64,000 nucleotides of DNA from NCBI GenBank assembly GCA_002269645.1, contig NIVC01000776.1, forward strand, positions 127,333 to 191,332, read 5' to 3'. Position numbers and translations under genes: made by a program. Shown here in pieces: positions 24,001 to 59,255 of the stretch. The notes under the pieces are model-generated. The model was not told the DNA's origin, did not search any database, and saw only the letters and a program-made list of their open reading frames with translations. Numbering within the stretch: position 1 is the first letter of the stretch; each line of letters begins with the position of its first letter. The stretch is from Macrostomum lignano (lineage: Eukaryota).

Positions 24001-26947
24001 GAACTGTTGGGGCAGGTGGATCACCTACCGGTTAGTGAACTGTTGGGGCAGGTGGATCACCTACCGGTTGGTGAACTGTTGGGGCAGGTGGATCACCTAC
24101 CGGTTGGTGAACTGTTGGGGCAGGTGAATCACCTACCGGTTGGTGAACTGTTGGGGCAGGTGGATCACCTACCGGTTAGTGAACTGTTGGGGCAGGTGGA
24201 TCACCTACCGGTTAGTGAACTGTTGGGGCAGGTGGATCACCTACCGGTTAGTGAACTGTTGGGGCAGGTGGATCACCTGACCGGTTGTTGAACTCTGGGG
24301 GCAGGTGGATCACCTACCGGTTAGTGAACTCTGGGGGCAGGTGGATCACCTACCGGTTAGTGAACTCTGGGGGCAGGTGGATCACCTACCGGTTAGTGAA
24401 CTGTTGGGGCAGGTGGATCACCTACCGGTTGGTGAACTGTTGGGGCAGGTGGATCACCTACCGGTTGGTGAACTGTTGGGGCAGGTGGATCACCTACCGG
24501 TTAGTGAACAGTTGGGGCAGGTGGATCACCTACCGGTTAGTGAACTGTTGGGGCAGGTGGATCACCTACCGGTTGGTGAACTGTTGGGGCAGGCGGATCA
24601 CCTACCGGTTGGTGAACTGTTGGGGCAGGTGGATCACCTGACCGGTTGTTGAACTCTGGGGGCAGGCAGATCACCTACCGGTTGTTGAACTCTGGGGGCA
24701 GGCGGATCACCTACCGGTTGGTGAACTCTGGGGGCAGGCGGATCACCTACCGGTTGGTGAACTGTTGGGGCAGGCGGATCACCTACCGGTTGGTGAACTC
24801 TTGGGACAGGTGGATCACCTGACCGGTTGTTGAACTCTGGGGGCAGGCGGATCACCTACCGGTTGGTGAACTCTTGGGGCAGGTGGATCACCTACCGGTT
24901 GTTGAACTCTTGGGGCAGGCGGATCACCTACCGGTTGGTGAACTCTTGGGGCAGGTGGATCACCTACCGGTTGGTGAACTGTTGGGGCAGGCGGATCACC
25001 TACCGGTTGGTGAACTCTTGGGACAGGTGGATCACCTGACCGGTTGTTGAACTCTGGGGGCAGGCGGATCACCTACCGGTTGGTGAACTCTTGGGGCAGG
25101 TGGATCACCTACCGGTTGTTGAACTCTTGGGGCAGGCGGATCACCTACCGGTTGGTGAACTCTTGGGGCAGGTGGATCACCTACCGGTTGTTGAACTCTT
25201 GGGGCAGGCGGATCACCTACCGGTTGGTGAACTCTTGGGGCAGGTGGATCACCTACCGGTTGTTGAACTCTTGGGGCAGGCGGATCACCTACCGGTTGGT
25301 GAACTCTGGGGGCAGGCGGATCACCTACCGGTTGGTGAACTCTTGGGGCAGGTGGATCACCTGACCGGTTGTTGAACTCTGGGGGCAGGCGGATCACCTA
25401 CCGGTTGGTGAACTCTGGGGGCAGGTGGATCACCTACCGGTTGGTGAACTGTTGGGGCAGGTGGATCACCTGACCGGTTGTTGAACTCTGGGGGCAGGCG
25501 GATCACCTACCGGTTGGTGAACTGTTGGGGCAGTGGATCACCAGTGGCAGTCTGAATCAAATGCGGTTTAGCTGTTGCTGTGAATATTCTCAAATATTGA
25601 TGCGAATTCCCAACTGGGACATCCCCACCGTCCCCAGGTGAACGGCCAGCTCCGCTGCATCGGCAGTCCGCAGTATCTGAAAAGCAAATTCGGCTGCGGC
25701 TTCACCGTCTACCTTCGGGTCGCCAAGCCGGCTGCCGGCACCGCGCCGGAGCTCCGGGAGGACGCGATCGCCGACTCGCCGAAGGAGTCGGCGCTGGCCG
25801 ACACGGAGGAGCTGCAGTTGCTGGAGCCCACGGCGGCTCTGACGCCGGAGATGCAGCCGGCGCACGCCGTCTTCACTGCGGCCTTTCCCGGCGCCGAGCT
25901 GCGCTCAGCCCACGTCTGCCAGCTGCAGTACCGCCTGCCCGGCGACCGGCTCGGCTGCCGCCTTGCCGGCCTCTTCGCCGAGCTGCAGGCCATGCGGAAG
26001 GCCGGCCAAGTGCTGGACTACTCGGTGACCCAGACCAGTCTGGACCAGGTGGGCGGCTGTGACTCTGCGGATTGGGGCTGGCACCGACTCCTGATTGGGG
26101 CTAGCACCCTCTCCTGATTGGGGCTAGCACCCTCTCCTGATTGGGGCTGGCACCCTCTCCTGATTGGGGCTAGCACCCTCTCCTGATTAGGGCTAGCACC
26201 CTCTCCTGATTGGGGCTGGCACCGACTCCTGATTGGGGCTGGAACCCTCTCCTGATTGGGGCTGGCACCCTCTCCTGATTGGGGCTGGCACCGACTCCTG
26301 ATTGGGGCTAGCACCCTCTCCTGATTGGGGCTAGCACCCTCTCCTGATTAGGGCTAGCACCCTCTCCTGATTGGGGCTGGCACCCTCTCCTGATTGGGGC
26401 TGGAACCCTCTCCTGATTGGGGCTGGCACCCTCTCCTGATTGGGGCTGGCACCGACTCCTGATTGGGGCTGGCACCCTCTCCTGATTGGGGCTAGCACCC
26501 TCTCCTGATTGGGGCTGGCACCCTCTCCTGATTGGGGCTGGCACCCTCTCCTGATTGGGGCTGGCACCCTCTCCTGATTGGGGCTGGCACCGACTCCTGA
26601 TTGGGGCTAGCACCCTCTCCTGATTGGGGCTAGCAGCCTCTCATCAGGTTGCTTCTGATTCCTTAACATTTGTGGTACTGAAGCAATTAAAGGTACTTTT
26701 AATTACAATAACTGTCACACTTCCAAAAAACTCGCATCGCCCAGGTGTTCATCGATTTCGCCTCGGCGAAAACCTCAGCGGATCGCAAGGAGGCCGACGA
26801 AGCCCCTGATGGCAAAGGTAAGCGCTGCTTGATTGATATGCTCTAAACTGCCTACTCGTTAGTAGCGATACGCGTATATGATGCAATTTCTGTCAATTTT
26901 CAGGATCCCAACAGTGCAAGCGAGGCGCCAACGCTGCCAGTTGCTGA
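6062..26947 (+). CDS. Full-length ABCA-subfamily ABC transporter (ABCA1/2/4/7-like), 22 exons, ~2400 aa
   Basis: Exons: 6062-6139, 6213-6433, 7235-7353, 8141-8259, 8947-9165, 9256-9336, 10083-10452, 10981-11129, 11586-11705, 12422-13072, 14144-15323, 15420-15788, 16415-16869, 17194-18055, 18863-19547, 20166-20371, 20454-20892, 21284-21426, 21665-21923, 25638-26048, 26745-26817, 26904-26947. All are GT-AG and phases fit except for one missing base near 17545. Motifs: N-terminal [36 protein letters not shown]; NBD1 GHNGAGKST / LSGGMKRRL / VVLDEPTAG / TTHHMDEAD; VWFDNRGY; NBD2 GVNGAGKTT / YSGGNKRKL / FLDEPTAG / TSHSMEDC; C-terminal SLDQVF. The ECD1 exons (7.2-11.7 kb) are less certain. Confidence 0.93.
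6537..7162. repeat. Intronic minisatellite, 46-bp unit (GGGGGTTGCAAGCCCAGACTCCCAGCCTGCATCCACTGGACTGTAG)
   Basis: About 13 tandem copies in ABCA intron 2. Confidence 0.95.
7597..8095. repeat. Intronic minisatellite, 14-bp unit (ATCGCTAATCCTAT)
   Basis: Tandem array in ABCA intron 3. Confidence 0.95.
8570..8832. repeat. Intronic minisatellite, 20-bp unit (GCGCCAAGGTGTCAGGATGA)
   Basis: Tandem array in ABCA intron 4. Confidence 0.92.
9445..10020. repeat. Intronic minisatellite, ~20-bp unit (GTGAGTCAGTGGGATCTCAA)
   Basis: Tandem array in ABCA intron 6. Confidence 0.92.
11205..11510. repeat. Degenerate intronic minisatellite, ~22-bp unit (GAGTGAATCTCAGCTTATGGAG)
   Basis: Recurrent GAGTGAATCT in ABCA intron 8. 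Confidence 0.85.
11850..12310. repeat. Intronic minisatellite, 18-bp unit (TCCTCATTTCCAGGTCTA)
   Basis: Tandem array in ABCA intron 9; it explains the spurious ISMSIL / HFHVYP ORFs. Confidence 0.93.
13095..13728. repeat. Intronic minisatellite, 38-bp unit made of two 19-bp subunits (CCCTATGCTGTACTGTACA / CCCTATGTTATTCTGTACA)
   Basis: Tandem array in ABCA intron 10. Confidence 0.95.
13745..14026 (+). mobile_element. Decayed hAT-type MITE, same family as 60189-60723, left TIR missing
   Basis: Shares CCAGATAGAGAACC..GCATGACTGCG, a GA-rich core and GGATTGCTATTGT..AAAGGACC..GCCGGAT..GAGGCTT..GGCCGGAGTT with the 60.2-kb copy. Confidence 0.75.
15812..16310. repeat. Intronic minisatellite, 18-bp unit (TGCTCACTTCCTGCTCAC)
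   Basis: Tandem array in ABCA intron 12. Confidence 0.95.
16900..17115. repeat. Intronic minisatellite, 18-bp unit (GGGTAGACTGGGTAGTCA)
   Basis: Tandem array in ABCA intron 13. Confidence 0.95.
18225..18690. repeat. Intronic minisatellite, 16-bp unit (GACCCCTAACTCCATT)
   Basis: Tandem array in ABCA intron 14. Confidence 0.92.
19732..20042 (-). mobile_element. tRNA-derived SINE (family 2, copy 1) in ABCA intron 15
   Basis: Aligns to 40371-40570. The minus strand begins GGCCGTAGCCCAGTCG (A box) and has a B-box-like ACTCGATTCC. It carries ~150 bp extra (about 19808-19955) relative to copy 2. Confidence 0.8.
20960..21160. repeat. Intronic minisatellite, 40-bp unit (GGGGTAGAGTGAGGGTATCGGAGCCCTAAAAGCACTGGAA)
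   Basis: About 5 copies in ABCA intron 17. Confidence 0.88.
22015..22860. repeat. Intronic minisatellite, 20-bp unit (AGATCTGTAGCTCTCATGGA)
   Basis: Tandem array in ABCA intron 19. Confidence 0.95.
23150..23450 (-). mobile_element. Degenerate 3' fragment of a CR1/L2/Jockey-group LINE ORF2
   Basis: Minus-strand translation [14 protein letters not shown] resembles the SFxPxxxxLWNxLP motif at the end of these LINE ORF2s; upstream frames are broken. Confidence 0.5.
23930..25540. repeat. Intronic minisatellite, 36-bp unit (CTACCGGTTGGTGAACTGTTGGGGCAGGTGGATCAC)
   Basis: A ~1.6-kb array in ABCA intron 19; variants form higher-order blocks. Confidence 0.95.
26070..26632. repeat. Intronic minisatellite, 23-bp unit (GATTGGGGCTGGCACCCTCTCCT)
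   Basis: Tandem array in ABCA intron 20. Confidence 0.95.

Positions 26948-43947: not shown

Positions 43948-44010
<63 letters not shown>
43948..44010. repeat. (TG)n microsatellite
   Basis: Pure dinucleotide run. Confidence 0.97.
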
Positions 44011-44014
<4 letters not shown>

Positions 44015-44348
44015 ATACTTGCCCGCCCAGCGACTCCAGTTGCTGTCCCCGCTGTTGTGCCGCTAACCATTGATCGATCTCATCAGGCATTGTTAAATAA
44101 TAAATCATGTTTTGACACGCCGCCATTGCTGATAGGCAGCCCCAGAATTTCAGGTCTCCTCTCTATCTGATCGGTAAAGCCAATTGGATTCTGCCCGGTC
44201 TTCGATCTTTTTTGACTTTATTTAAATATTTGAGAAATTCAAGTTGCATTCCGAATGCCGAACAAGATCGAATATCAACAATAAACAGCAGCAGCAATTG
44301 CACAAGTGTAATCAAGGTATTCGGACAGCAGCCGCAAATAAATGCCTG

Positions 44349-47300
44349 TCAATCATCGTCCAGCAGCAGGCTAATCAGCTGCTGAGCCCGTGGGCTGAGG
44401 TCCGAGGATATCAGCGGTTGCGGCGGCAGCGGTGCGTCCGGCAGCCAGACTTGCAGCTCCGCCGAATGCGTCGGGACTGTCGCGGAACTGGCAGCCGCGG
44501 CGAGCTGATGCGGCTGCTGATGCGGCTCCGCTGACAGGCCGAGCTCCGCTTCAACCAGCGGCTGGTCGGACGGCCTGGCCGGCAGCAGCAGTGCCTGTTC
44601 GGCCACAGTGGCTCTGCGCACCGCCTCGGCAGCCGGCGTGTGCAGCAGGCGGGCTGTCAGATCGGCGTGCGCCCGGTGCACGTGGCGGCAAAAGCCGGTC
44701 TGGCCCGCCGGCCGGCAGTCGCAGCGGTACAGGTGCGGGCACAGGCCGGCACAGGCGGCGGACGGGCAGAGTCGGAAGCAGAGCCGCTCCGGACAGACGG
44801 AGCGAACCCGACGGACCAGCTGGTTGCCGGCCACGAGGCAGGGCTGCCCGGCCAGCTGCGCCTGCAAGAGTGCGACAGCAGTGCATGTACAGCATTGCGA
44901 GCTGAATTCAGAAAGCATATTCATGGACACCCACATATTCATGGACACCCGCATATTCATGGACACCCGCATATTCATGGACACCCACATATTCATGGAC
45001 ACCCGCATATTCATGGACACCCGCATATTCATGGACACCCGCGTATTCATGGACACCCACATATTCATGGACACCCGCATATTCATGGACACCCACATAT
45101 TCATGGACAACCACATATTCATGGACACCCGCATATCCATGGACACCCACATATTCATGGACACCCGCATATTCATGGACACCCGCATATTCATGGACAC
45201 CCGCGTATTCATGGACACCCACATATTCATGGACACCTGCATATGGACACCCACATATTCATGGACACCCACATATTCATGGACACCCGCATATTCATGG
45301 ACACCTGCATATGGACACCCACATATTCATGGACACCCACATATTCATGGACACCCGCATATTCATGGACACCCACATATTCATGGACACCCACATATTC
45401 ATGGACACCCGCATATTCATGGACACCCGCTCACCTGGATCTCCCTCGGACAGAACTGATCGGCCAAATCCGGCCAGGCGGGCCCGCTGTGAATGGCCGG
45501 CGCGTCTGTCCGAAAAGCCGCCGTCACCGGGGCGGTGGCGGTGTCGCCGGCCAGGGACTCCCGGTGGCTATCGAGGTCGTCGTCCAGCTCGCAGCAGCTG
45601 CGGCGCCAGTCAGCCGCCTCAAGCACCAGCGCCAGCAGGCGGTCGGGCCGGCGCGTCCGTCCGGCGAAGTGCAGGGGTAGCAGACCGAGCAGTCCCGGGT
45701 TCGAGTGCAGCCGCATCTCCACCCAGCGAAGGCGGGCCGGCTTGGCCGCGTCCGCCCACAGCTGCGGCCAGCGGGCAAGGCGGTCGGCGCGAGCCGCCAG
45801 CTCCGGCGAGACGCGGCGGAATTTTCTGGCGAATTCTGACAGGGCGGCGGAGGCCCGGCCGAGCTGCGGCTGCACTGCCGCGGCGTGGAGCTCCAGCAGC
45901 AGCAGGGCGGCCACGTCCCACTGGTCCGGGCGGGCCTGCGGTTGAGTGACAGTGGAGTGGACTGAGGAAAATGGGGAGAACTGAGGACAATGCGGAGGAA
46001 TGAGGACGCAATGCGGTGGACTGAGGACGCAATGCGGAGGACTGAGGGCGCAATGCGGTGGACTGAGGACACGATTGGGACGACTGACACAATGGGGAGG
46101 TCTAAAAACAGGGGAGTGGACTGAAGAGACAATCAGATGGCAGACGCTCACCTGCAGGCAGCGCCGCCAGCTCCTCAGCAGCTGCAGCCGCTCGGCAAAG
46201 CAGCCGGCAGCCCTGGGGAACACGCGGGCCCCGGCAGTGGCGCCCAGCAGTCCGGGCGGCAGCAGCAGCCAGCCGGTGAAGGCGCAGCCGGAGTCGGAGC
46301 GAGGCGAATCGGCCGCTGCGGTGACGCAGCAGCGCAGCCAGTCCTCAACGCGAGTCTCGGTGACTCGGTCAGTCAGCAACCAGCCGCCTGTCTGTGGCCG
46401 CCCTGAAATGCCAAGCAGCAATCAAGCATGTACCATCTAAGCATCTTGTACAGAATGCTCAACAACACTCAATAAAGTCGATAGGGTTATTTTTCTCATT
46501 CAAAACTGCATAAAGTTGCCGACTGCCTCACCCTCAGCATCCAGCAGCAGCAGGCAGAGCACGCTGAGCTCCTCGGGGTCGGAGCTCTCGTAGACGCAGT
46601 CGATGACCAGAGCTTCGGCGCTGGAAAGACGCTGCGCCAGCAGCTGCCGCTCTGACGGCGCCTGCAGCGTCAGCGCGCAGCCGAGCGCGCCGTCAGACGG
46701 GTGAAAGCCGGCGCCAAGCCGGACGCGGTTTCTGAAGCACCAGGAGCGTCGGAACTGGCACAGCAGCAGCGGGCTGGCCGGCCCGGCCGCCAGTTCGGCC
46801 AGCAGTCGCTCCTCGACCGCCTGCCACGGCTGCTGGCCGCCCAGGGCATGGCCGCGTAGGGCCTCGCGCGTCAGGCGCCGGGCCAGCCGGGGGTCGCACA
46901 GCCGGTCGGGCTCCTCAGTAGACAGCAGCGCCGAGCGCAGCGCGCGGGCGCGCACGTCTGGCACGTGACTGGCTTCGCCAGCGCTGAAGCGGGTGCGGGC
47001 GGGCGGCCGGTGCTCCGGGTGGTGGCGGTGCAGCAGGGAGTAGCGAATCCGGTAGCCGGCCAGGCCGCCCGGCCGCCTGGAGGCGATGATGCGGGCCGGG
47101 CAGGCCAGGCGGGTCCGCCAGCCCGCGCTGCAGCTGTGCACGCAGTAGCGAACCGCGCCGGGCTCGCCGCCGCCGCCCTCCCGCCGCAGGCTGCTGACAT
47201 AGTACCGGCAGCCGACGCTGGCCTCGTGGCTGAGGCGCCAGGCTGTCAGCTCGGCGTGGCTGGCCACCTCGGCGCTGCGCCACTCGCCGCTGACGCCGGC

Positions 47301-47570
47301 CCATCCCGGCTTCTTTGCTGGGCCGGTCGGGCGGCTCCGCTTTCTGGGCGGCTGCTCGGGAGACTCCTGCCGGTGCAGCAGCGCGTGCCGCAGGCGGAGG
47401 TGCCGGCGCAGGTTAGCCAAGAGGCGGAACTGCCGGCCGCACAGCGGGCAGGGCCGGTCGCGCCGCTTCGCAGATCCGGACTCGTCGCCGTCGCCGTCGC
47501 CGTCCAGCAGAGCCTCCAGCTCGTGGCATTGCCGTTGGATTTCTTCCACTGGCGGGAACTCGATGCGCGA
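44349..47570 (-). CDS. MULE-transposase-derived zinc-finger protein (C2H2 + WRKY/GCM1-like + inactive MULE DDE + SWIM), 4 exons found, ~770 aa
   Basis: Exons 47570-46532, 46402-46152, 45935-45435 and 44861-44349 are GT-AG and join into one uninterrupted frame of 768 codons. Motifs: CPLCGRQF..LRRHLRLRH; YCVHSC...CPARI...Y..LHRHH; LVIDCVY..L.VLCLLLLDAEGRP..W; RRPDRLL; CPSAAC..LCPHLYRCDC...FCRHVH. Confidence 0.82.
44915..45430. repeat. Intronic minisatellite, 18-bp unit (ATATTCATGGACACCCGC)
   Basis: Fills intron 3 of the MULE-derived gene. Confidence 0.95.
45955..46130. repeat. Short degenerate minisatellite, ~21-bp unit (GCAATGCGGTGGACTGAGGAC)
   Basis: Fills intron 2 of the MULE-derived gene. 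Confidence 0.8.
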
Positions 47571-48782
47571 CTGCAGATGGGAAATTGTTGATAATATTAA
47601 AATTCCCTTTGCGAGATTCTACCTGTGTCGTCACCTGTGACACGCACACGCTCGAAGCTCTATTTCAACAATCAGTGTGCAACCTTTTCGGAAACATATT
47701 GTACACCACAAACCCCCTGCACCGCTTTGATATTTATGGCATTTATGCATAATAAAAAAGTAAGGAAACAAAAAGACCAAATCATCCCGAAGCAAAAGAA
47801 ATTCGTCACTGTTTTACTATTTTTTTATCTTTTCAGCGAGCAAGCGCAACAGAAACTAATTGAAAGAAAGTGAGCCAGTCAAGCAAGTCGATAAGCACTG
47901 ACTGCGGATTCCAATGCATGGGGAATGTCGGATAGGGCGGGACAGAGTTATACTCAGCTAGGTAAAATAATATATAATGCGACGGCGCGTGTAATATGAT
48001 GTATTATTAGCTGATAAATAGCAAACGGATTAACACTGACCAGATTGACCATAATAGCAAAGGAGGTGAATATAACAATGCAAAGCAGCGGAGACTCCCA
48101 CACACCAATACAGGAAAGCAGCAAGCAGAAACACTTTATAGCGGAAGACGGGCACAACAAATAAACGGACAAGCGTTCCGATGAAAAACGGTACCCCAAG
48201 GCCAGGAAGCGTCCCAGAGTCACTTGCGTCGCCCAGGTAACAACACAGGTAAAATAGGACAGAAGCGACTCTAGAGGACTCTAAAAGGACGAGAAGTCAC
48301 GGTGAAGGACGCCAAAAAAGTCGTAAAAGAGTCGCCTAAGAGCCTATTTGAGGCGTGAGTCTGGGGCGCTTCTAGAATGACTCCGGGGCCGTAGAATCGT
48401 ATCTCAGGCGTTGCTTGCTTGAGTCAGAATTGCATTTCGCATTTATAAAAACTCTTATTAGTGTACTCAAGATAGTAGTAAGCTAAGCGCTAACAAACCG
48501 ACTATTGAACAAATCTTTCGCGTGTTGGCAATGACTCCAGCGATTTTCGTAACGGTAACGTTTTCAACGGGGCGGTGGATTGGATAAGCGAATGAACAAC
48601 AGAATAGCGCATAAAACTGCATTTCAATTTCAATCACAATCATCAAAAACATCTTAAATCAAACAGATATAACGAGCCAACACGCAATGGGAACCCATCG
48701 AATTTAAATCTCAATCGATCCGGGGCGGACAGCTGCTTTAGGGACAATTTGTCTCGCAAACAGAGAGCTGCGCTCGCAACTG

Positions 48783-49777
48783 TCAAAGACGGCCCATTTG
48801 AGCGCGCAAATCCTCCAGACTCAGGCCGGAGTCCTGCACTGCGGCGGCAGGGGCGGCGGCATCAGCGGCAGCGGCGGGCACCGAGTAGGCCGTGCGGACA
48901 CCGCCGCCGGCTCCAACAGAGCGGCCGGCCGCCGCCTCGTCACCGCCCTCCTCAACCAGCTCGATGCACCAGTCGTTCTCCGAGTGGACTGCGGCCGCAG
49001 CGGCCGACGAGTCCTGCTCCGCTGAGTCAGGCGTGGCGGCGGCGGCAGCAGCGGCGTCGGCCTTGGCGGCCTCGCGCTGACGGCGCTGGCAGGCGGGCTC
49101 GGCGCAGTCGGGATTGGGCTTGAGCGACTCCACCGGGAAGAAGTCGGTCATGGCCGAGTAGCCCAGGTAGGGAGACACCCGGCCGAAGCCCAGCAGCAGC
49201 TTGAGGGTGGCTTGGACCAGCAGGCCGGCCACGATGCCCATTGTGGTGGGCAGGGACGCCGCGCAGACGCCCTCCCGCTTCAGCGTCCGCTCATCGCCGC
49301 CTTCGGCCACGACAAGCGGCGGCAGGCAGGCGAAGCAGGGCGTCCGGCCCGGCCGCATCAGCTGCACGTGGCCGCTGACGGCGTCCTCGGAGACGCCGGA
49401 CTCCAGCCAGGTGAGGCCGAGCTCGGTGCACATGGCGCTGACCGCCACGCGGGCCTCGTAGTTGTCAACGCAGGCCAGCAGCGTCTGTACGGGGCCGCCG
49501 TCGGGCAGGCCGCCTTCGGCTGCGCGAGACCGGAGCAGCTCGTAGCCTTCCATTGTTGTCACGTTGCAGGAGTGCGCCTCGATCTGATGGAGTTGAAGCG
49601 GGTCGGCGCTATCCTGCTGCAGCAGACAGACAGACAGACAGACAGACAGACAGTCAGACAGACAGTCAGTCAGTCAGACAGACAGACAGACAGACAGACA
49701 GTCAGTCAGTCAGACAGACAGTCAGTCAGTCAGTCAGACAGAGAGAGACAGACAGACAGACAGACAGAGAGACAGAC

Positions 49778-49814
<37 letters not shown>

Positions 49815-49817
49815 GTC

Positions 49818-49900
<83 letters not shown>

Positions 49901-49903
49901 CTA

Positions 49904-49960
<57 letters not shown>

Positions 49961-49973
49961 TACATACATACAT

Positions 49974-50054
<81 letters not shown>

Positions 50055-50145
50055 AAGACGGACGGACAGACAGACAGACGAACAGACAGACAGACAGACA
50101 GACAGAAAGACGGACGGACAGACAGACAGACAGACATACATACAT

Positions 50146-50178
<33 letters not shown>

Positions 50179-50209
50179 AAGATGGACAGACAGACAGACA
50201 GACATACAT

Positions 50210-50250
<41 letters not shown>

Positions 50251-50295
50251 AAGACAGCCAAGCAGACAGACAGACAGACAGAAAGACAGACAAGC

Positions 50296-50340
<45 letters not shown>

Positions 50341-50797
50341 CAGACAGGCAGGAACAACAATCCAGCCCACGCACCTGCACATCCGGATTGATGCCCAGCA
50401 GGGTCCTCTTGGCGGCCTCCACCTTGCTGAGGCCGGCCTGGTGCGGCTGGAAGAACAGGCGGTTCATGTTGGCCATCTCCACCTTGTCGTAGTCGAACAG
50501 GATGAGGCGGCCGACGCCGCAGCGGGTGAGCATCTCGGCCGTGACGGAGCCGACCCCGCCGACGCCAACAATGAGCACAGCCTGTTCGCGGATGCGCTCG
50601 TAGTTCTGCACAACGCCCATGCGCTGCAGCGCCATCAGCCGGCTGTAGGGATTCGAGTCCACGACCTCGGCGGACATTCGGTCGATTCGTTGGCGAGCGG
50701 AGGCTGGCTGGGCCTGGCGAAGTTCGGCCAGCTCGGACTCCAGCTCGGCTACTCGAGCTCGAAGCTGCTCCACATTGTTAGCATCAGTGGTTGCCAT
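48783..50797 (-). CDS. UBA5: UFM1-activating E1 enzyme UBA5, 2 exons, 407 aa
   Basis: Exons 50797-50375 and 49583-48783. Motifs: [65 protein letters not shown], catalytic Cys in [30 protein letters not shown]. Confidence 0.97.
49622..50348. repeat. (CAGA)n tetranucleotide microsatellite, ~730 bp
   Basis: Fills most of the UBA5 intron; it produces the spurious CLSV / TDRQ ORFs. Confidence 0.97.
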
Positions 50798-54879: not shown

Positions 54880-57800
54880 ATGTCCGAGGCGCAGAGTCAG
54901 AAAGGCTCGTCGAAGCCACAGACGCCCGCAACAGGGGCTGGCGACAAACAGCAGGACCTGGTGCCGCGAGAGTCCGACTTCACGGATAACAAGGCCTACC
55001 TGCTCACCGCTAGCAGCCAGAGTGGCATGAACTTGTAAGTTTTTTTACCGGGTTTCGAAATTTCTAAAGACAATTTACCAGGTAATACTCCGACTCTAAT
55101 TAACCAACAACTCCACCTGACCGAATTCAAGGTACGACCATCTCATCGTCTGCCTGAAAAAGATCCTCGAGGAGAAGCCCAGCAATGTAGTGGACATCTT
55201 CGAAGACATCAGCAAGGAGGGCAAACGGGCGAGGTTCGCCTCCAACGTGGACACGGTGCAGAACCAGTACGAGCGAACTACCGAGGTGGCCAAGGCCGAA
55301 GTGCAGCGGCATCTGTTTGAGGTGAGCACTGTAGCATACAGTTGCCTATCGGTGTACTTTCTAGCCAGGAGGAAATTAAAAAGCATTGAATTCCAAACCA
55401 ATGCATCTTCAGCCAACCCAGGGCGATGAAGATGAGGAAGAGATGGATTCGGCGCTGCCCAACCTGTGGCAGACCGCCTATCTGTTCGAGCAGGGAGGAG
55501 TCGGTAAGCGAAGGAAGCTCTCAGGAGATAAATTATGGGTTTTAGATCTTCCATAGCAACCGCTGGAGCTTTTGACAATTCAATGCTCTCCTGCAAACTC
55601 CCAAACTCAGGCCTGGACGCTGAGGAGACCTACCGCCTGTGGCTGGCTCTCAAAGAGCTGGAGAAGCAGCACAGCTTCGAGCAGCTGCGCTTCTGGGGCA
55701 AAATCCTCGGCACTGAGGGTGGCTATTACATCGCTGAGGGTCTGCTCAAGCAGGATGAGATAGACGCCATCGTCGAGGAGGAGGCGAAGGCCGCGGCAGC
55801 CACCGCCAGCAGTGCCGACGGCAGCAAGCCGGAACAAGCCGGGGCCGACTCCGCCGCTGACGCTGAAGCCGCTGGCGACGCCGACGAGGAGCCGCCGGAG
55901 GACCCGATCCCCAAGCCGGACTTCAAGACGCCGCCGGTGGTGCCACGCGAAGACGCCGGCTCCGGCGTCAACCGGTTTGTGTACTTTGTCTGCTCGGAGC
56001 CCGGCCGGCCCTGGACCCGCCTGCCCAGCGTGACCCCGGCGCAGATCCAGGCTGCCCGCAAGGTGAAGAAGTTCTTCACCGGCCGCCTTGACGCCCCTGT
56101 GGTCACCTACCCGCCGTTTCCCGGCAACGAGGCCAACTACCTGCGCGCTCAGGTCTGCCGGATCTCAGCCGGCACCATCATCTCGCCGCAGGTGAGTGCA
56201 ATGTTGTGCTAGCAAAATTTGGAACGAGTCAATGCTGTGGTCAAAGTTAAATCTCAAAGTTGTAAAACCATAAGAGAGCGTCTACTGACGAGTAGCGAGG
56301 AAAGAGAATTAAGCGATTCCCTTATAGCCAGCTGATGTAAGAAAAACTGTTGGGCACCGGGCAGTTTAATAGAACATTAACTGTTTCCCGGCGGGTCCTG
56401 GCTCAGAAGACCAGCTGACAGCGGGCTAGGAGCTCAGAAATGTTTACTTCAGGTAATCAGGCTTACCTGGTCTGGACTACCCTTCCCAAATGCTTACCCT
56501 CACCGAAACTGCAGGGCTTTTACATGTTCGACGAAGAGGAGGAAGAGGATGAGGAGGGCGGCGGCCGCGACAACTTCGTGGAGAACCCGGAGTTCGAGCC
56601 GATGCCGGTGCGGGAGCTCATCGACCCCAGCCTGTCCAGCTGGGTGCACCATGTGCAGCACGTCCTGCCGCAGGGCCGCACCCGCTGGTGGAATCCGGCG
56701 CAGAAGCGGGACGACGATTCCGTTGACGACGAGGATGAAGAGGAGAAGGAGGAGATGGACGAGCCGCAGCCGGAGGAGGGCCCACCGCTGCTGACGCCGC
56801 TGTCCGAGGACGCGGAGGTTGACGGCAACCAGCCGTGGACGGCGCGGCTCTCGTCGCAGCTGCTGCCGCAGTTCTCGGTTGCCGTCCTGTCCTCCAACCT
56901 GTGGCCGGGCGCGTACGCGGTGGCCCAAGGCAGGTGCGAGTCGCGGCGAGAGATGACTGGGGAGAAGAGAGAAAGGGGAGAATTAGGAACAGGAGAGGGG
57001 AGAATTAGGGACATGAGAGGGGAGAATTAGGGACATGAGAGGGGAGAATTAGGGACATGAGAGGGGAGGGACAGGAGAGGGGAGAATTAGGGACATGAGA
57101 GGGGAGAATTAGGGACATGAGAGGGGAGAATTAGGGACATGAGAGGGGAGGGACAGGAGAGGGGAGAATTAGGGACATGAGAGGGGAGAATTAGGGGCAT
57201 GAGAGGCGAGGGACATGAGAGGCGAGAGACAGGAGAGGGGAGAATTAGGGACATGAGAGGCTAGGGACAGGAGAGGGGAGAATTAGGGACATGAAAGGCG
57301 AGGGACAGGAGAGGGGAGAATTAGGGACATGAGACGGGAGAATTAGGGACATGAGAGGGGAGAATTAGGGACATGAGAGGCTAGGGACAGGAGAGGGGAG
57401 AATTAGGGACATGAAAGGCGAGGGACAGGAGAGGGGAGAATTAGGGACATGAGACGGGAGAATTAGGGACATGAGAGGGGAGAATAAGGGACATGAGAGG
57501 CTAGGGACAGGAGAGGGGAGAATTAGGGACATGAGAGGGGAGAATTAGGAACAGGAGAGGGGAGAATTAGGAACAGGAGAGGGGAGAATTAGGCACATGA
57601 GAGGGGAGAATTAGGGACATGAGACGGGAGAATTAGGGACATGAGAGGGGAGAATTAGGGACATGAGAGGCTAGGGACAGGAGAGGGGAGAATTAGGGAC
57701 ATGAAAGGCGAGGGACAGGAGAGGGGAGAATTAGGGACATGAGACGGGAGAATTAGGGACATGAGAGGGGAGAATAAGGGACATGAGAGGCTAGGGACAG

Positions 57801-59255
57801 GAGAGGGGAGAATTAGGGACATGAGAGGGGAGAATTAGGAACAGGAGAGGGGAGAATTAGGAACAGGAGAGGGAGAATTAGGCACATGAGAGGGGAGAAT
57901 TAGGAACAGGAGAGGGGAGAATTAGGAACAGGAGAGGGGAGAATTAGGAACAGGAGAGTGGCGAATTAGGGACAGGAGAGGGAAGAATTAGGGACAGGAG
58001 AGGGGAGAATTAGGGACAGGTGAGGGGAGAATTAGGGACAGGAGAGGGAAGAATTAGGGACAGGAGAGGGGAGAATTAGGGACAGGTGAGGGGAGAATTA
58101 GGGACAGGAGAGTGGCGAATTAGCGACAGGAGAGGGGAGAATTAGGGACAGGAGAGGGGAGAATTAGGGACAGGAGAGGGGAGAATTAGGAACAGGAGAG
58201 GGGAGAATTAGGAACAGGAGAGGGGAGAATTAGGAACAGGAGAGGGGAGAATTAGGAACAGGAGAGGGGAGAATTAGGAACAGGAGAGGGGAGAATTAGG
58301 AACATGAGAGGGGAGAATTAGGAACAGGAGAGTGGTGAATTAGGGACATGAAAGGGGAGAATTAGGAACAGGAGAGTGGTGAATTAGGGACATGAAAGGG
58401 GAGAATTAGGAACAGGAGAGGGGAGAATTAGGAACATGAGAGGGGAGAATTAGGAACAGGAGAGGGGAGAATTAGGGACAGGTGAGGGGAGAATTAGGAA
58501 CAGGAGAGGGTAGAATTAGGAACAGGAGAGGGGAGAATTAGGAACAGGAGAGGGGAGAATTAGGAACAGGAGAGGGGAGAATTAGGAACAGGAGAGGGGA
58601 GAATTAGGAACATGAGAGGGGAGAATTAGGAACATGAGAGGGGAGAATTAGGAACAGGAGAGTGGTGAATTAGGGACATGAAAGGGGAGAATTAGGAACA
58701 GGAGAGGAGAGAATTAGGAACATGAGAGGGGAGAATTAGGAACAGGAGAGGGGAGAATTAGGGACAGGTGAGGGGAGAATTAGGAACAGGAGAGGGTAGA
58801 ATTAGGAACATGAGAGGGGAGAATTAGGAACATGAGAGGCATTATTTTTGCAGCAGAACCAAGTAGCCTCTGTGACTAAATAAAAAGCGATCGCAGAAAG
58901 GGAAAATAAGAGAGAGAAGAAAGGGAGGCAGGGAAAAGGGAGAGAAGAGAAAGGAACCGGAAAGGCACAGGAGCTGAGAAGTGAGCCGGAGAAGTCGCAG
59001 CCCAGTCCCGCCCATGCCCGCAGTCTATTCGAGAACGTGTACATCGGCTGGGGCCACAAGTACGCCACCGAGAACTACAGCCCACCGCCGCCGCCGCCAG
59101 TGCTGCTGGAGTTCCCCAGCGGGCCGGAGATCACCGAGACGGAGGACCCGACGCCCGAGGAGGAGGCGGCGCTGAAGGCGGCCCTGGCCGAGGCCGAGGA
59201 GGGCGCCGAGGAGGGCGCGGGCGAGGAGGAGGAGGACGAGGAGGAGGACGACTGA
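54880..59255 (+). CDS. RSPH4A: Radial spoke head protein 4/6 homolog, 6 exons, 555 aa
   Basis: Exons 54880-55034, 55132-55321, 55413-55503, 55611-56191, 56515-56933, 59024-59255, with consistent phases. Motifs: [91 protein letters not shown] and an acidic tail. RSPH4A versus RSPH6A cannot be resolved. Confidence 0.95.
56965..58840. repeat. Purine-rich intronic minisatellite, ~20-22-bp unit (GAGAGGGGAGAATTAGG(G/A)ACA(T/G))
   Basis: A ~1.9-kb array filling the last RSPH4A intron. Confidence 0.95.

What the first reader, a model, noticed from the sequence alone, without database searches (positions are those of the whole stretch)
44349..47570. Apparently domesticated, catalytically dead Mutator transposase gene with introns and three zinc-binding modules
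Seen in sequence: four GT-AG exons join into one open frame of 768 codons with host-like GC-rich codons, two introns filled with minisatellites like those of neighbouring host genes, and no TIR or TSD nearby. Established knowledge: animal MULE transposases have a WRKY/GCM1-like DNA-binding domain, D[GS]T motif 1, a second Asp, a CxxH signature, a TNxxE motif and often a C-terminal SWIM finger. Here D1 survives (LVIDCVY), but the D2 region reads GWLLLPP, the CxxH position reads CFAE, and the Glu motif reads NPGLLG, while the C2H2, WRKY-like and SWIM ligands (HLYRCDC...CRHVH) are kept. Inference: an exapted DNA- or chromatin-binding protein comparable to FAR1/FHY3 or ZSWIM-type domesticates, possibly undescribed in this lineage.
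Basis: partly seen in the sequence, partly recalled or inferred. Interest (0 to 1): 0.82.

Follow-up and report, generated by a model that had tools for sequence, protein, structure and literature searches.

The report
Domesticated, inactive Mutator transposase gene
A flatworm (Macrostomum lignano) host gene derives from a Mutator-type jumping-gene enzyme, has lost its DNA-cutting residues but keeps its zinc-binding modules, is under purifying selection, and probably takes its start codon from the trans-spliced leader RNA; this kind of gene is known in other organisms.

Summary
On the minus strand of 44349-47570, four GT-AG exons join into 767 codons plus a stop. Two introns are filled with minisatellites, codon GC matches the neighbouring UBA5 gene, and no flanking inverted repeats were found. 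The window is Macrostomum lignano, and the gene is annotated only as a "hypothetical protein, partial".

Pfam finds only a weak C2H2 finger. A full HMMER scan of 1.84 billion proteins links the Cys/His-rich C-terminus (E 1e-9 to 1e-3) to animal proteins. All six full-length or near-full-length ones tested carry Pfam MULE, five also ZSWIM1-3 RNaseH-like, and three an N-terminal C2H2. The alignment is collinear end to end. D1 is kept. D2 (TDED to LPPG), the CxxH histidine and the Glu motif are gone. A low-confidence AlphaFold model still hits an IS256-family transposase and WRKY domains.

Three sequence-distinct genomic copies sit in identical synteny (radial spoke, UBA5, gene, DOT1L). Their exons have no indels and pN/pS is 0.20 (P = 2e-5).

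It begins at a consensus trans-splice acceptor, and the spliced leader ends in an in-frame ATG.

Verdict: a new member of a known kind. Its function as a DNA-binding regulator is inferred, not shown.

The parts
47571..47584 (-). Candidate SL trans-splice acceptor (tttcccatctgcag|TCGCGC) immediately 5' of the open frame
   Evidence: CTGCAG fits the M. lignano trans-splice acceptor motif [T/C]TNCAG (PMC8629364). It is identical in all copies. One annotated gene model starts at the acceptor and two start 6 and 9 nt after it.
46532..47570 (-). Exon 1 (codons 1-346 plus 1 nt): C2H2 finger, WRKY-like domain, linker, start of the RNase H-like core
   Evidence: Identical to exon 1 of locus L004 (NIVC01000776.1), which carries the PAA76961 gene.
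47385..47450 (-). C2H2 zinc finger, residues 41-62 (CPLCGRQFRLLANLRRHLRLRH)
   Evidence: Pfam zf-C2H2 E 0.0015, 19.3 bits, below the 25.2-bit cut-off. PDB C2H2 fingers match. It aligns with the C2H2 finger of relatives P0017, P0039 and P0014.
47019..47282 (-). WRKY/FAR1-like beta-sheet zinc module, residues about 97-184 (ligands C147, C157, H181, H183; 'CPARI' motif)
   Evidence: HMM match to the family profile at CPARI. It scores above 1000 of 1000 shuffles. pLDDT is 60-80. Foldseek hits WRKY DNA-binding domains 7z0u and 2ayd, E 0.01-0.02, TM 0.56-0.60. A 24-residue basic loop present in relatives is deleted here.
46403..46531 (-). Intron 1 (129 nt; 82 nt in the other copies)
   Evidence: GTGAGG...TTTCAG
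46152..46685 (-). Degenerate MULE RNase H-like core, residues about 296-430; spans the end of exon 1, intron 1 and exon 2
   Evidence: Collinear with the Pfam MULE / ZSWIM1-3 RNaseH-like segment of relatives. The predicted order of secondary-structure elements is beta-beta-beta-alpha-beta-alpha-beta-alpha. Foldseek hits the ISCth4 transposase at E 2.6e-4. D2 and the CxxH histidine are replaced.
46599..46601 (-). Codon of D324, the surviving first catalytic Asp (VIDCVY)
   Evidence: Aligns with D of 'VDxTH' in relatives
45936..46151 (-). Intron 2 (216 nt here; 410 and 145 nt in the other copies), mostly a 21-bp minisatellite
45435..45935 (-). Exon 3 (codons 431-597): helical region with the degenerate Glu-motif area and the only Met (504)
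   Evidence: There is no significant similarity to relatives in residues 430-560.
44862..45434 (-). Intron 3 (573 nt here; 95 nt in the other copies), almost entirely an 18-bp x 29 minisatellite
44349..44861 (-). Exon 4 (codons 598-767 plus TGA)
44667..44795 (-). Cys8-His4 C-terminal zinc domain with a SWIM-like CxCxnCxH core, residues 620-662
   Evidence: 64 bits against the family HMM. phmmer E 1e-9 to 1e-3 against 1.84 billion proteins. All 12 Cys/His are invariant in 23 aligned sequences. AlphaFold gives pLDDT 82. No PDB fold match and no Pfam SWIM hit.
44217..44222 (-). AATAAA poly(A) signal, 126 nt after the stop codon
   Evidence: There is no AATAAA or ATTAAA in the 1212 nt between the UBA5 stop and the acceptor.
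48783..49562 (-). Last UBA5 exon (context): upstream gene on the same strand, possible operon partner
   Evidence: ThiF domain in the annotated neighbour. The stop codon lies 1212 nt upstream of the acceptor.

Best explanation
The locus is a host gene of Macrostomum lignano that descends from a Mutator-like (MULE) transposase.

Shown:
- It keeps the ancestral layout: C2H2 finger, WRKY-like zinc module, RNase H-like core, and a Cys8-His4 domain with a SWIM-like core.
- Its core has lost the second catalytic Asp, the CxxH histidine and the Glu motif.
- It has no terminal inverted repeats.
- It sits at one fixed syntenic position: radial spoke gene, UBA5, this gene, DOT1L.
- It carries three introns not present in the Amphiura relative, and it uses host-like codons.
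- It evolves under purifying selection.

Inferred from sequence and literature:
- The mRNA is made by spliced-leader trans-splicing at 47570, possibly from a UBA5-containing polycistronic precursor.
- The leader's 3'-terminal AUG supplies the initiator Met in frame (M-SRIEF...), because the body of the gene has no ATG before codon 504.

Inferred by analogy:
- The product cannot transpose DNA.
- It acts as a zinc-dependent, sequence-specific DNA- or chromatin-binding factor, as FHY3/FAR1 do.
- The C2H2 and WRKY-like modules would read DNA. The dead core and the C-terminal zinc domain would serve as an oligomerisation or partner-binding scaffold.
For: Identity and annotation: the protein is 99-100% identical to M. 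lignano 'hypothetical protein, partial' entries.

MULE ancestry:
- Residues 610-672 match 24 relatives at E 1e-9 to 1e-3 among 1.84 billion proteins.
- Of the ten C-terminal hits scanned against Pfam, all six full-length or near-full-length ones carry MULE, and five of those also carry ZSWIM1-3_RNaseH-like; three have N-terminal C2H2 fingers. Nine of the 12 relatives in the family alignment match MULE.
- The alignment is collinear end to end.
- hhalign gives probability 97.8% and E 1e-12 over residues 256-671.
- Three collinear HMM domains were found, and the N-terminal and core segments each score above 1000 of 1000 shuffles.
- The predicted core has the RNase H strand/helix order.
- Foldseek's top hits are the IS256-family ISCth4 transposase (E 2.6e-4), then WRKY domains.

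Inactivity: 'TDED' reads 'LPPG' and 'CxWH' reads 'ERLQ'. No flanking inverted repeats were found.

Host-gene status:
- The three copies fetched as DNA (one identical to the window), each on a different scaffold, share the same neighbours.
- Splice sites are conserved. Exons have no indels, while intron lengths range 82-129, 145-410 and 95-573 nt.
- There are 19 synonymous and 10 non-synonymous changes, pN/pS 0.20, P = 2e-5. For codons 1-503 alone, P = 0.003.
- GC at codon positions matches that of UBA5.

Start codon:
- The only Met is at codon 504.
- The acceptor CTGCAG fits the trans-splice motif, and the leader sequence ends in ...TTGCATG (PMC8629364).
- Use of the flatworm leader AUG as initiator is documented (Cheng et al. 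2006, cited in PMC9851317).
Against: - Pfam does not detect MULE, SWIM or FAR1/WRKY in this protein, even at E 10.
- The MULE core alone gives hhalign E 0.13, and residues 430-560 show no signal.
- The full-length AlphaFold model is poor (mean pLDDT 44). It was also built on an alignment that already contains MULE relatives, so the Foldseek hit is not independent evidence.
- The selection test rests on only 29 changes between recent paralogues or haplotypes of one species.
- No orthologue from another flatworm was found in the databases.
- No RNA data were available here. Trans-splicing, the junctions and expression rest on the public annotation and on sequence motifs.
- Nothing tested here bears directly on DNA binding or function.
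Confidence: 0.75

Rival explanations
1. It is a decaying transposon relic with no function of its own. It is merely carried along in the UBA5 transcription unit, and its long open frame is a by-product of GC-rich sequence.
For: - The catalytic residues are lost and the protein is only about 20% identical to its relatives.
- No orthologue was found in other species.
- GC-rich DNA here produces many long spurious ORFs on both strands.
- The ORF lacks its own ATG.
Against: - The coding frame has zero stops, against 9 and 12 in the other sense frames.
- Exons have no indels in three copies, whereas introns and flanks carry many.
- Synonymous changes are in excess: pN/pS 0.20, P = 2e-5.
- All splice sites are conserved.
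- All 12 zinc ligands of the C-terminal domain and the other finger ligands are intact.
Confidence: 0.08
2. The frame is not a separate gene. It is a C-terminal extension of UBA5, made by cis-splicing from a donor (gca|GTGCAG) 57 nt before the end of the UBA5 stop codon to the acceptor at 47570. This would be a SETMAR-like enzyme-transposase chimera.
For: - The UniProt model P0002 (A0A1I8GZ54, 871 aa) joins UBA5 '...AAPAAA' in frame to 'SRIEF...'.
- The ORF has no ATG of its own.
- There is no canonical poly(A) signal in the 1.2-kb spacer.
Against: - The NCBI annotation of all three fetched loci keeps a complete 414-aa UBA5 with its own stop and a separate downstream gene.
- The donor GTGCA departs from the species consensus GT[G/A]AG.
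- The UBA5 part of P0002 is visibly garbled compared with the genome, which suggests an unreliable prediction.
- The leader's AUG gives an equally in-frame start.
- A minor fusion isoform cannot be excluded.
Confidence: 0.1
3. Only the last 264 codons are translated, starting from Met504. The product would be a small protein with the SWIM-like domain, and the upstream 503 codons would be untranslated leader.
For: One annotated copy (PAA64934, 264 aa, named by UniProt 'SWIM-type domain-containing protein') is modelled exactly this way. Met504 is the only ATG in frame.
Against: - Codons 1-503 are open in all copies.
- They show 11 synonymous against 7 non-synonymous changes (pN/pS 0.24, P = 0.003), and the ZnF/WRKY segment shows 5 against 1.
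- They align collinearly with the N-terminal domains of relatives.
Confidence: 0.05
4. The protein is not MULE-derived at all. It shares only a mobile Cys/His-rich domain, and a C2H2 finger, with proteins that happen to contain MULE domains.
For: Every statistically strong match is confined to residues 610-672 or to the C2H2 finger. The core alone gives E 0.13. Pfam MULE is negative.
Against: - The order and spacing of four modules are the same as in relatives of similar length: 767 aa against 772-789 aa.
- The weak matches fall at the collinear positions, with HMM 86-103 / 241-302 / 524-584 matching residues 152-169 / 301-365 / 610-672.
- Both weak matches beat all 1000 shuffles.
- The RNase H strand/helix order and the ISCth4 Foldseek hit support a MULE core.
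Confidence: 0.05

Closest known systems
Uncharacterised animal C2H2 - WRKY-like - MULE - Cys8His4 proteins (e.g. Penaeus chinensis LOC125045492 XP_047498736, Amphiura filiformis 'uncharacterized protein' P0039, Mercenaria mercenaria LOC128551563)
   Same: The order of modules and the overall length are the same. The signature C-x4-C-x3-C-x4-C-x3-C-x-H-x-Y-x-C-x-C-x6-9-C-x-H-x-H-x2-H is invariant. The 'CPARI' and 'LQTxEQ' motifs are shared. Several of these proteins have also lost a catalytic residue: D1 in the shrimp group, Glu in the brittle-star group.
   Different: Overall identity is only about 20%. The flatworm protein has lost D2 and the CxxH histidine, which the others keep. It lacks a 24-residue basic loop in the WRKY-like module and the C-terminal 'LLxHVxGTVxxLVxxCE' helix. 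It has three introns where the Amphiura gene has one exon. Pfam MULE no longer detects it.
FHY3 / FAR1 / FRS and MUSTANG (plant MULE-derived transcription factors)
   Same: These are domesticated MULE transposases with an N-terminal WRKY/FAR1-type zinc DNA-binding module, a transposase core reused as a scaffold, and a C-terminal SWIM-type finger. They have no inverted repeats and sit at fixed loci (established knowledge; PMC13306707, PMC6446971).
   Different: They represent an independent domestication in plants. Pfam FAR1, MULE and SWIM recognise them but do not recognise this protein. This protein adds a C2H2 finger and a larger Cys8-His4 domain. Its function is untested.
Vertebrate ZSWIM1 / ZSWIM3 (Pfam PF21056 ZSWIM1-3_RNaseH-like) and animal 'FHY3-like' genes (PMC10027918)
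   Same: These are animal host genes with a MULE-type RNase H-like domain and a SWIM finger. The relatives of this protein hit PF21056 at E 1e-8 to 1e-14.
   Different: This protein itself does not hit PF21056. No flatworm member is reported in PMC10027918.
Flatworm MULE transposons: Curupira, 'MULE-Phytophthora_1 subgroup Sm', Phantom (Dupeyron et al. 2019, PMC6446971)
   Same: They belong to the same superfamily and occur in the same phylum. Some carry SWIM and FLYWCH (WRKY-type) fingers.
   Different: Those are mobile elements with target-site duplications (some also with terminal inverted repeats), and presumably with intact DDE residues.
IS256-family transposase ISCth4 (PDB 6xgx, 6xgw)
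   Same: It is the best structural match of the model (E 2.6e-4, about 240 columns). By established knowledge, IS256 is the bacterial family related to eukaryotic Mutator.
   Different: It is a bacterial, active DDE enzyme. Identity is 14-16% and the model is of low confidence.

Membership tests
MULE transposase superfamily (descent from) | Match to Pfam MULE PF10551 (or PF21056) above the gathering score | tested here: not met
   No hit at E up to 10 for the whole protein or for the core alone.
MULE transposase superfamily (descent from) | Significant, collinear homology to proteins that themselves pass Pfam MULE | tested here: met
   phmmer E 1e-9 to 1e-3 to MULE-bearing proteins. hhalign probability 97.8%, E 1e-12, residues 256-671. 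Three collinear HMM domains. Shuffle tests, 0 of 1000 reach the real score. The core alone is only E 0.13.
MULE transposase superfamily (descent from) | RNase H-like fold of the catalytic core | tested here: inconclusive
   The predicted element order fits and Foldseek's top hit is the IS256-family ISCth4 transposase at E 2.6e-4. However, core pLDDT is only 50-64 and the input alignment already contained MULE proteins.
Active MULE transposase / autonomous element | Intact D, D, E triad with the CxxH signature | tested here: not met
   D324 is kept. 'TDED' reads 'LPPG', 'CxWH' reads 'ERLQ', and the Glu motif is absent.
Active MULE transposase / autonomous element | Terminal inverted repeats and target-site duplication; multiple dispersed copies | tested here: not met
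   No flanking inverted repeats. All fetched loci lie in the same synteny. No second copy in the window. A whole-genome copy count was not possible.
Domesticated (exapted) transposase gene | Purifying selection on the reading frame | tested here: met
   19 synonymous against 10 non-synonymous changes, pN/pS 0.20, P = 2e-5. Pairwise dN/dS is 0.19-0.30. No exon indels. Only recent within-species copies were compared.
Domesticated (exapted) transposase gene | Orthologues at a syntenic position in related species | not testable with these tools
   No other Macrostomum genome could be searched, and none appeared in the protein databases.
Domesticated (exapted) transposase gene | Spliced, expressed transcript | not testable with these tools
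   Indirect evidence only. NCBI models of four copies use the same junctions. Splice sites are conserved, and the introns in the other copies are not multiples of 3.
SWIM zinc finger (PF04434 / CxCxnCxH) | CxCxnCxH signature with beta-beta-alpha arrangement | tested here: met
   C644-x-C646-x8-C655-x-H657 is invariant in 23 aligned sequences. The model (pLDDT 82) places a strand before CxC and a helix from CxH onward.
SWIM zinc finger (PF04434 / CxCxnCxH) | Match to the Pfam SWIM profile or to a solved SWIM structure | tested here: not met
   No PF04434 hit in this protein or in any relative tested, at E up to 10 for this protein, four relatives' C-terminal domains and four short fragments, and at E up to 0.01 for the 12 family members. 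Foldseek against PDB returned no match. UniProt does name the 264-aa copy 'SWIM-type domain-containing protein'.
WRKY-GCM1 / FAR1 / FLYWCH-type zinc DNA-binding fold | Four-stranded sheet with C..C..HxH ligands; match to known members | tested here: inconclusive
   The ligands C147, C157, H181 and H183 align with the family. Foldseek hits WRKY domains at E 0.01-0.02 with TM 0.56-0.60. There are no Pfam FAR1, FLYWCH or WRKY hits.
C2H2 zinc finger | C-x2-C-x12-H-x3-5-H with a Pfam match | tested here: inconclusive
   The pattern is perfect at residues 41-62. Pfam gives E 0.0015 and 19.3 bits, below the 25.2-bit cut-off. It aligns with fingers of relatives, some of which pass the cut-off.
SL trans-spliced gene using the leader AUG (flatworm slORF) | Consensus trans-splice acceptor at the 5' end, with the leader's AUG in frame and required | tested here: met
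   The CTGCAG acceptor fits [T/C]TNCAG. The leader ends in ATG, and the frame continues directly. There is no other ATG before codon 504. SL-containing reads were not available, so the trans-splicing itself is not shown.

The most novel reading that the evidence does not exclude
The flatworm gene may be one branch of an old, unnamed bilaterian family of exapted MULE genes, seen here in a brittle star, penaeid shrimps, probably a bivalve, and a flatworm. The family would be defined by a unique Cys8-His4 zinc domain with no solved structural counterpart. Different lineages have lost different catalytic residues, which would mean either repeated domestication or a single ancient one. In M. lignano the gene has additionally become dependent on the spliced leader for its start codon, as the downstream member of a UBA5 operon.
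Probability: 0.3. Interest if true: 0.6.

Novelty: new member of a known kind. Interest (0 to 1): 0.45.

Why it matters
Domesticated Mutator transposases are well-studied regulators in plants (FHY3/FAR1, MUSTANG) but barely characterised in animals. This locus gives a clean animal example in a flatworm that can be manipulated genetically. It is catalytically dead, intron-bearing, syntenically fixed and under selection. It is also too diverged for standard domain libraries to see, which shows how such genes escape annotation. It appears to need the spliced leader's AUG to be translated, which makes it a convenient test case for leader-donated start codons in M. lignano. Its strongly conserved Cys8-His4 domain has no structural match and is a reasonable target for structure determination.

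Tried and rejected
- Pfam on the whole protein and on three sub-segments gave nothing beyond a weak C2H2 finger. Pfam SWIM on the C-terminal domains of this protein and its relatives also gave nothing.
- phmmer of the protein and an HMM of the family against PDB sequences returned only C2H2 fingers or noise.
- The word-indexed homologue search found only the M. lignano copies, both with the protein and with the alignment A1. The full HMMER scan was needed to reach any relative.
- hhalign of the core alone and of the N-terminus alone was not significant. I replaced it with shuffle tests.
- The full-length AlphaFold model was poor, with mean pLDDT 44.
- Foldseek of the confident C-terminal domain model found no PDB match.
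- I looked for shared intron positions with the Amphiura relative as a test of orthology. There are none, because the whole MULE part is a single exon there.
- I looked for terminal inverted repeats around the gene and around the Amphiura relative and found none.
- I searched the literature for the gene identifier and got no hits.
- I considered that the introns might be artefacts, since all three are multiples of 3 and intron 2 is open in frame. I rejected this because the other copies have introns of 82, 410/145 and 95 nt.


Full report
**1. What is in the sequence**

The feature lies on the minus strand. Translating 47700-44200 shows that all four coding blocks fall in one genomic frame. 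Joining them at GT-AG sites gives exons 47570-46532, 46402-46152, 45935-45435 and 44861-44349.

- All three donors read GTGAG and all acceptors read CAG. These are the cis-splice consensus sequences reported for this species (PMC8629364).
- The other two sense frames of the spliced sequence hold 9 and 12 stops. The open frame is therefore not a side effect of the 60-63% GC of this stretch.
- Intron 3 is almost entirely an 18-bp x 29 minisatellite, and intron 2 holds a 21-bp x 5.5 array. The window carries about 20 more arrays of the same type.
- GC at codon positions 1/2/3 is 0.76/0.57/0.86. The last UBA5 exon gives 0.75/0.56/0.85, while introns and flanks are 40-56% GC.
- No inverted repeat pair brackets the gene.

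**2. Organism and annotation**

The protein is 99% identical to the Macrostomum lignano entry 'hypothetical protein BOX15_Mlig023565g1, partial'. It also matches a UniProt model that fuses it to UBA5.

- The 90% cluster holds four NCBI entries on four scaffolds of assembly GCA_002269645.1.
- Locus L004 (NIVC01000776.1) is identical to the window in all four exons and in the lengths of the three introns, so the window comes from that scaffold.
- All three fetched loci have the same neighbours: radial spoke protein (opposite strand), ThiF/UBA5 (same strand, upstream), this gene, and DOT1 (convergent). The DOT1 exons are visible in the window at about 39.7-43.2 kb.
- The copies are therefore homeologues or haplotypes of one locus, not transposed copies.

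**3. Is it MULE-derived?**

Direct tests fail. Pfam reports only a sub-threshold C2H2 finger (E 0.0015) for the whole protein and nothing for three sub-segments. PDB sequences return only C2H2 fingers.

A full HMMER scan of 1.84 billion representatives gave two classes of hit besides the protein itself. One class is C2H2 arrays matching residues 25-71. The other is 20-odd proteins matching residues about 610-672 at E 1e-9 to 1e-3.

- Of the ten second-class hits scanned against Pfam, all six full-length or near-full-length ones carry MULE (PF10551). Five of those also carry ZSWIM1-3_RNaseH-like (PF21056), and three have N-terminal C2H2 fingers. The other four, including the 1121-aa P0013, gave no Pfam hit.
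- In the later 12-member family alignment, nine members match MULE.
- Named members are 'uncharacterized protein' entries from Penaeus, Mercenaria and Amphiura.
- A MAFFT alignment with five of them is collinear from end to end. It runs through the C2H2 finger, a 'CPARI' WRKY-like module, an 'LQTxEQ' motif, the D1 strand, the D2 strand, the CxxH helix, an invariant Trp, and a C-terminal block in which every Cys and His is invariant.
- hhalign of the protein against a 12-member family profile gives probability 97.8% and E 1e-12 over residues 256-671.
- Most of that score comes from the C-terminus. The core alone gives E 0.13 and the N-terminus alone E 0.011.

I therefore scored segments against the family HMM and compared each with 1000 composition-preserving shuffles.

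| Segment (residues) | Real score | Shuffles reaching it |
|---|---|---|
| 80-205 | 3.8 bits | 0 of 1000 |
| 300-430 | 1.5 bits | 0 of 1000 |
| 430-560 | no signal | not applicable |
| 600-680 | 64 bits | 0 of 1000 |

The three HMM domains fall at collinear positions with matching spacing: HMM 86-103, 241-302 and 524-584 against residues 152-169, 301-365 and 610-672.

An AlphaFold2 model built from a 14-sequence alignment is poor overall, with mean pLDDT 44.

- It predicts a beta-beta-beta-alpha-beta-alpha-beta-alpha order over residues 320-429, which is the RNase H order.
- Foldseek against PDB ranks the IS256-family transposase ISCth4 first (E 2.6e-4) and WRKY DNA-binding domains next (E 0.01-0.02, TM 0.56-0.60).
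- By established knowledge, IS256 is the bacterial family related to Mutator.
- The input alignment already contained MULE proteins, so this is corroboration and not an independent test.

Taken together, descent from a MULE transposase is well supported, although the protein has drifted beyond the reach of the Pfam models.

**4. Catalytic state**

These readings come from the alignment.

- D1 is retained (D324, VIDCVY).
- The D2 strand 'MTDED' reads 'LLPPG'.
- Anchored on the invariant R-S-W, the C/S-x-W-H signature aligns to E417-R-L-Q420.
- Two relatives keep the canonical 'TNxxESxH' Glu motif. This protein reads 'MRLHSN', like the brittle-star group ('TNYHSN'). That part of the alignment has no statistical support.
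- The relatives are themselves partly degenerate. The shrimp group has lost D1 ('SIVPIN') and the brittle-star group the Glu.
- With two of the three acidic residues gone and no terminal inverted repeats, the protein cannot be an active transposase.

**5. Zinc modules**

- The C2H2 finger (C41, C44, H57, H62) is canonical.
- The WRKY-like ligands (C147, C157, H181, H183) align with the family, but a 24-residue basic loop present in all relatives is deleted.
- The C-terminal block follows the signature C-x4-C-x3-C-x4-C-x3-C-x-H-x-Y-x-C-x-C-x6-9-C-x-H-x-H-x2-H. I found it in 24 relatives.
- That block contains the SWIM signature CxCxnCxH (C644, C646, C655, H657) plus five more Cys and three more His, enough for two or three zinc sites.
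- A domain-only AlphaFold model is confident (pLDDT 82, pTM 0.66). It has a strand before CxC and a helix starting at CxH.
- Foldseek finds no PDB counterpart for it. Pfam SWIM does not match this protein or any relative tested.
- UniProt labels the 264-aa copy 'SWIM-type domain-containing protein'.
- I therefore call it SWIM-like and not a verified SWIM member. There are probably more than three zinc sites in total.

**6. Is it a host gene under selection?**

I compared three distinct copies: the window (identical to L004), L001 and L003.

- Exons have no indels, and all splice sites and the 5' acceptor are conserved.
- Intron lengths differ widely: 129/82/82, 216/410/145 and 573/95/95 nt.
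- Because the other copies' introns are not multiples of three, the frame exists only after splicing.
- Exon divergence between the window and L001 is 1.0%, against 2-5% in introns and flanks.
- Pairwise Nei-Gojobori dN/dS is 0.19-0.30.
- Across the three copies there are 19 synonymous and 10 non-synonymous changes, giving pN/pS 0.20 and binomial P = 2e-5.
- The brittle-star relative encodes the whole MULE-derived part in a single exon. The three introns here are therefore likely gains made during residence as a host gene.
- Limitation: dS is only about 0.02 and all copies belong to one species. No orthologue from another flatworm was retrievable.

**7. The missing start codon**

- Upstream of exon 1 the frame closes after 16 codons without an ATG.
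- Exon 1 begins directly after 'tttcccatctgcag'. Its last six bases, CTGCAG, fit the M. lignano trans-splice acceptor motif [T/C]TNCAG.
- The M. lignano spliced leader is CGGTCTCTTACTGCGAAGACTCAATTTATTGCATG, which ends in ATG. Trans-splicing at 47570 would therefore give ATG|TCG CGC ATC, or M-S-R-I-E-F, in frame.
- Use of the flatworm leader's 3' AUG as initiator is documented for Schistosoma (Cheng et al. 2006, as cited in PMC9851317).
- Codons 1-503 are themselves under purifying selection (11 synonymous, 7 non-synonymous, P = 0.003; ZnF/WRKY segment 5 against 1). This argues against translation starting at Met504, which is how one copy is annotated.
- The NCBI models are all flagged 'partial', and their coding regions start at the acceptor or 6 to 9 nt after it.
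- The UBA5 stop lies 1212 nt upstream on the same strand with no AATAAA or ATTAAA in between, while an AATAAA follows this gene's stop by 126 nt. That is compatible with an operon, though slightly above the 1-kb repeat-adjusted threshold used in PMC8629364.
- The alternative is the cis-spliced UBA5 fusion of UniProt A0A1I8GZ54. It is in frame, but it uses a non-consensus donor (GTGCA) and comes from a visibly garbled model. I rate it as a possible minor isoform.

**8. Mechanism**

*Shown.* This is a MULE-derived, catalytically degenerate, zinc-module-bearing protein, encoded at a fixed locus and under purifying selection.

*Inferred from sequence and literature.* It is expressed by SL trans-splicing with a leader-donated AUG, possibly as the downstream gene of a UBA5 operon.

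*Inferred by analogy with FHY3/FAR1 and other exapted transposases.*
- It acts as a nuclear DNA- or chromatin-binding factor.
- Its C2H2 and WRKY-like modules read DNA.
- Its dead core and Cys8-His4 domain mediate oligomerisation or partner binding.
- A basic stretch, PRKRSRPTGPAKKPG (residues 74-88), looks like a nuclear localisation signal. This is read from the sequence and was not tested.

**9. Comparison and novelty**

- The kind is known. Examples are FHY3/FAR1/MUSTANG in plants, ZSWIM1/3 in vertebrates, and 'FHY3-like' genes scattered across animals (PMC10027918). MULE transposons with SWIM or FLYWCH fingers are known in flatworms (PMC6446971).
- This gene is a new, highly diverged member that domain libraries miss. 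No paper was found for the one gene identifier searched, Mlig023565.
- The wider family it belongs to is uncharacterised. It may represent either an old bilaterian domestication or repeated ones. That is the most novel reading the data leave open.

**10. Verdict**

- The gene is on the minus strand.
- It has no ATG of its own, and the start is probably donated by the spliced leader.
- SWIM and WRKY membership are only partly verified.
- There are more than three zinc sites.

Interest is moderate.

Noticed in passing
window 47616-47646 and 48225-48255: A 31-nt inverted repeat pair (81% complementary, 578 nt apart) sits in the spacer between the UBA5 3' end and the gene's acceptor. It could be a small non-autonomous transposon (MITE-like) insertion that lengthens the intergenic distance of a possible operon.
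   Followed up: no
window 49623-50351: A (CAGA)n microsatellite of about 184 units fills a UBA5 intron (minus-strand reading CTGT).
   Followed up: no
window 44862-45434, 45936-46151, 46403-46531 versus L001 and L003: Intron lengths differ several-fold between the copies (573 against 95; 216 against 410 and 145; 129 against 82). For introns 2 and 3 the difference lies in the minisatellite-rich sequence, while the exons have no indels.
   Followed up: yes
window 48839-48840 (UBA5 last exon): A GT (gca|GTGCAG) 57 nt before the end of the UBA5 stop codon is used by a UniProt model (A0A1I8GZ54) to fuse UBA5 in frame to the MULE-derived gene. It could be a minor read-through isoform or a prediction artefact.
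   Followed up: partly
window 56974-58839: A large 22-bp minisatellite (about 87 units, AG-rich) produces a strong GC and AT skew. It lies in the region of the radial spoke protein gene.
   Followed up: no
window 23950-25542, 22022-22858, 6540-7162, 13095-13728 and others: About 20 further minisatellite arrays with periods of 14-46 bp are scattered through the window. They appear to be a general feature of introns and intergenic DNA in this genome.
   Followed up: no
relatives P0014, P0037 and P0042 (penaeid shrimps) and P0017, P0039-P0041 (brittle star and related): Relatives in other phyla have also lost single catalytic residues. The shrimp group has lost D1 ('SIVPIN') and the brittle-star group the Glu ('TNYHSN'). 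The shrimp protein is over 90% identical between two species, and the Amphiura locus has no inverted repeats. This hints that these are domesticated genes too.
   Followed up: partly
L003 (NIVC01000387.1), last codons of the gene: In this copy the stop codon comes one codon earlier (…LLLDD* instead of …LLLDDD*).
   Followed up: no
window 43948-44011: A perfect (GT)32 microsatellite lies between the 3' ends of the convergent DOT1L gene and the MULE-derived gene.
   Followed up: no
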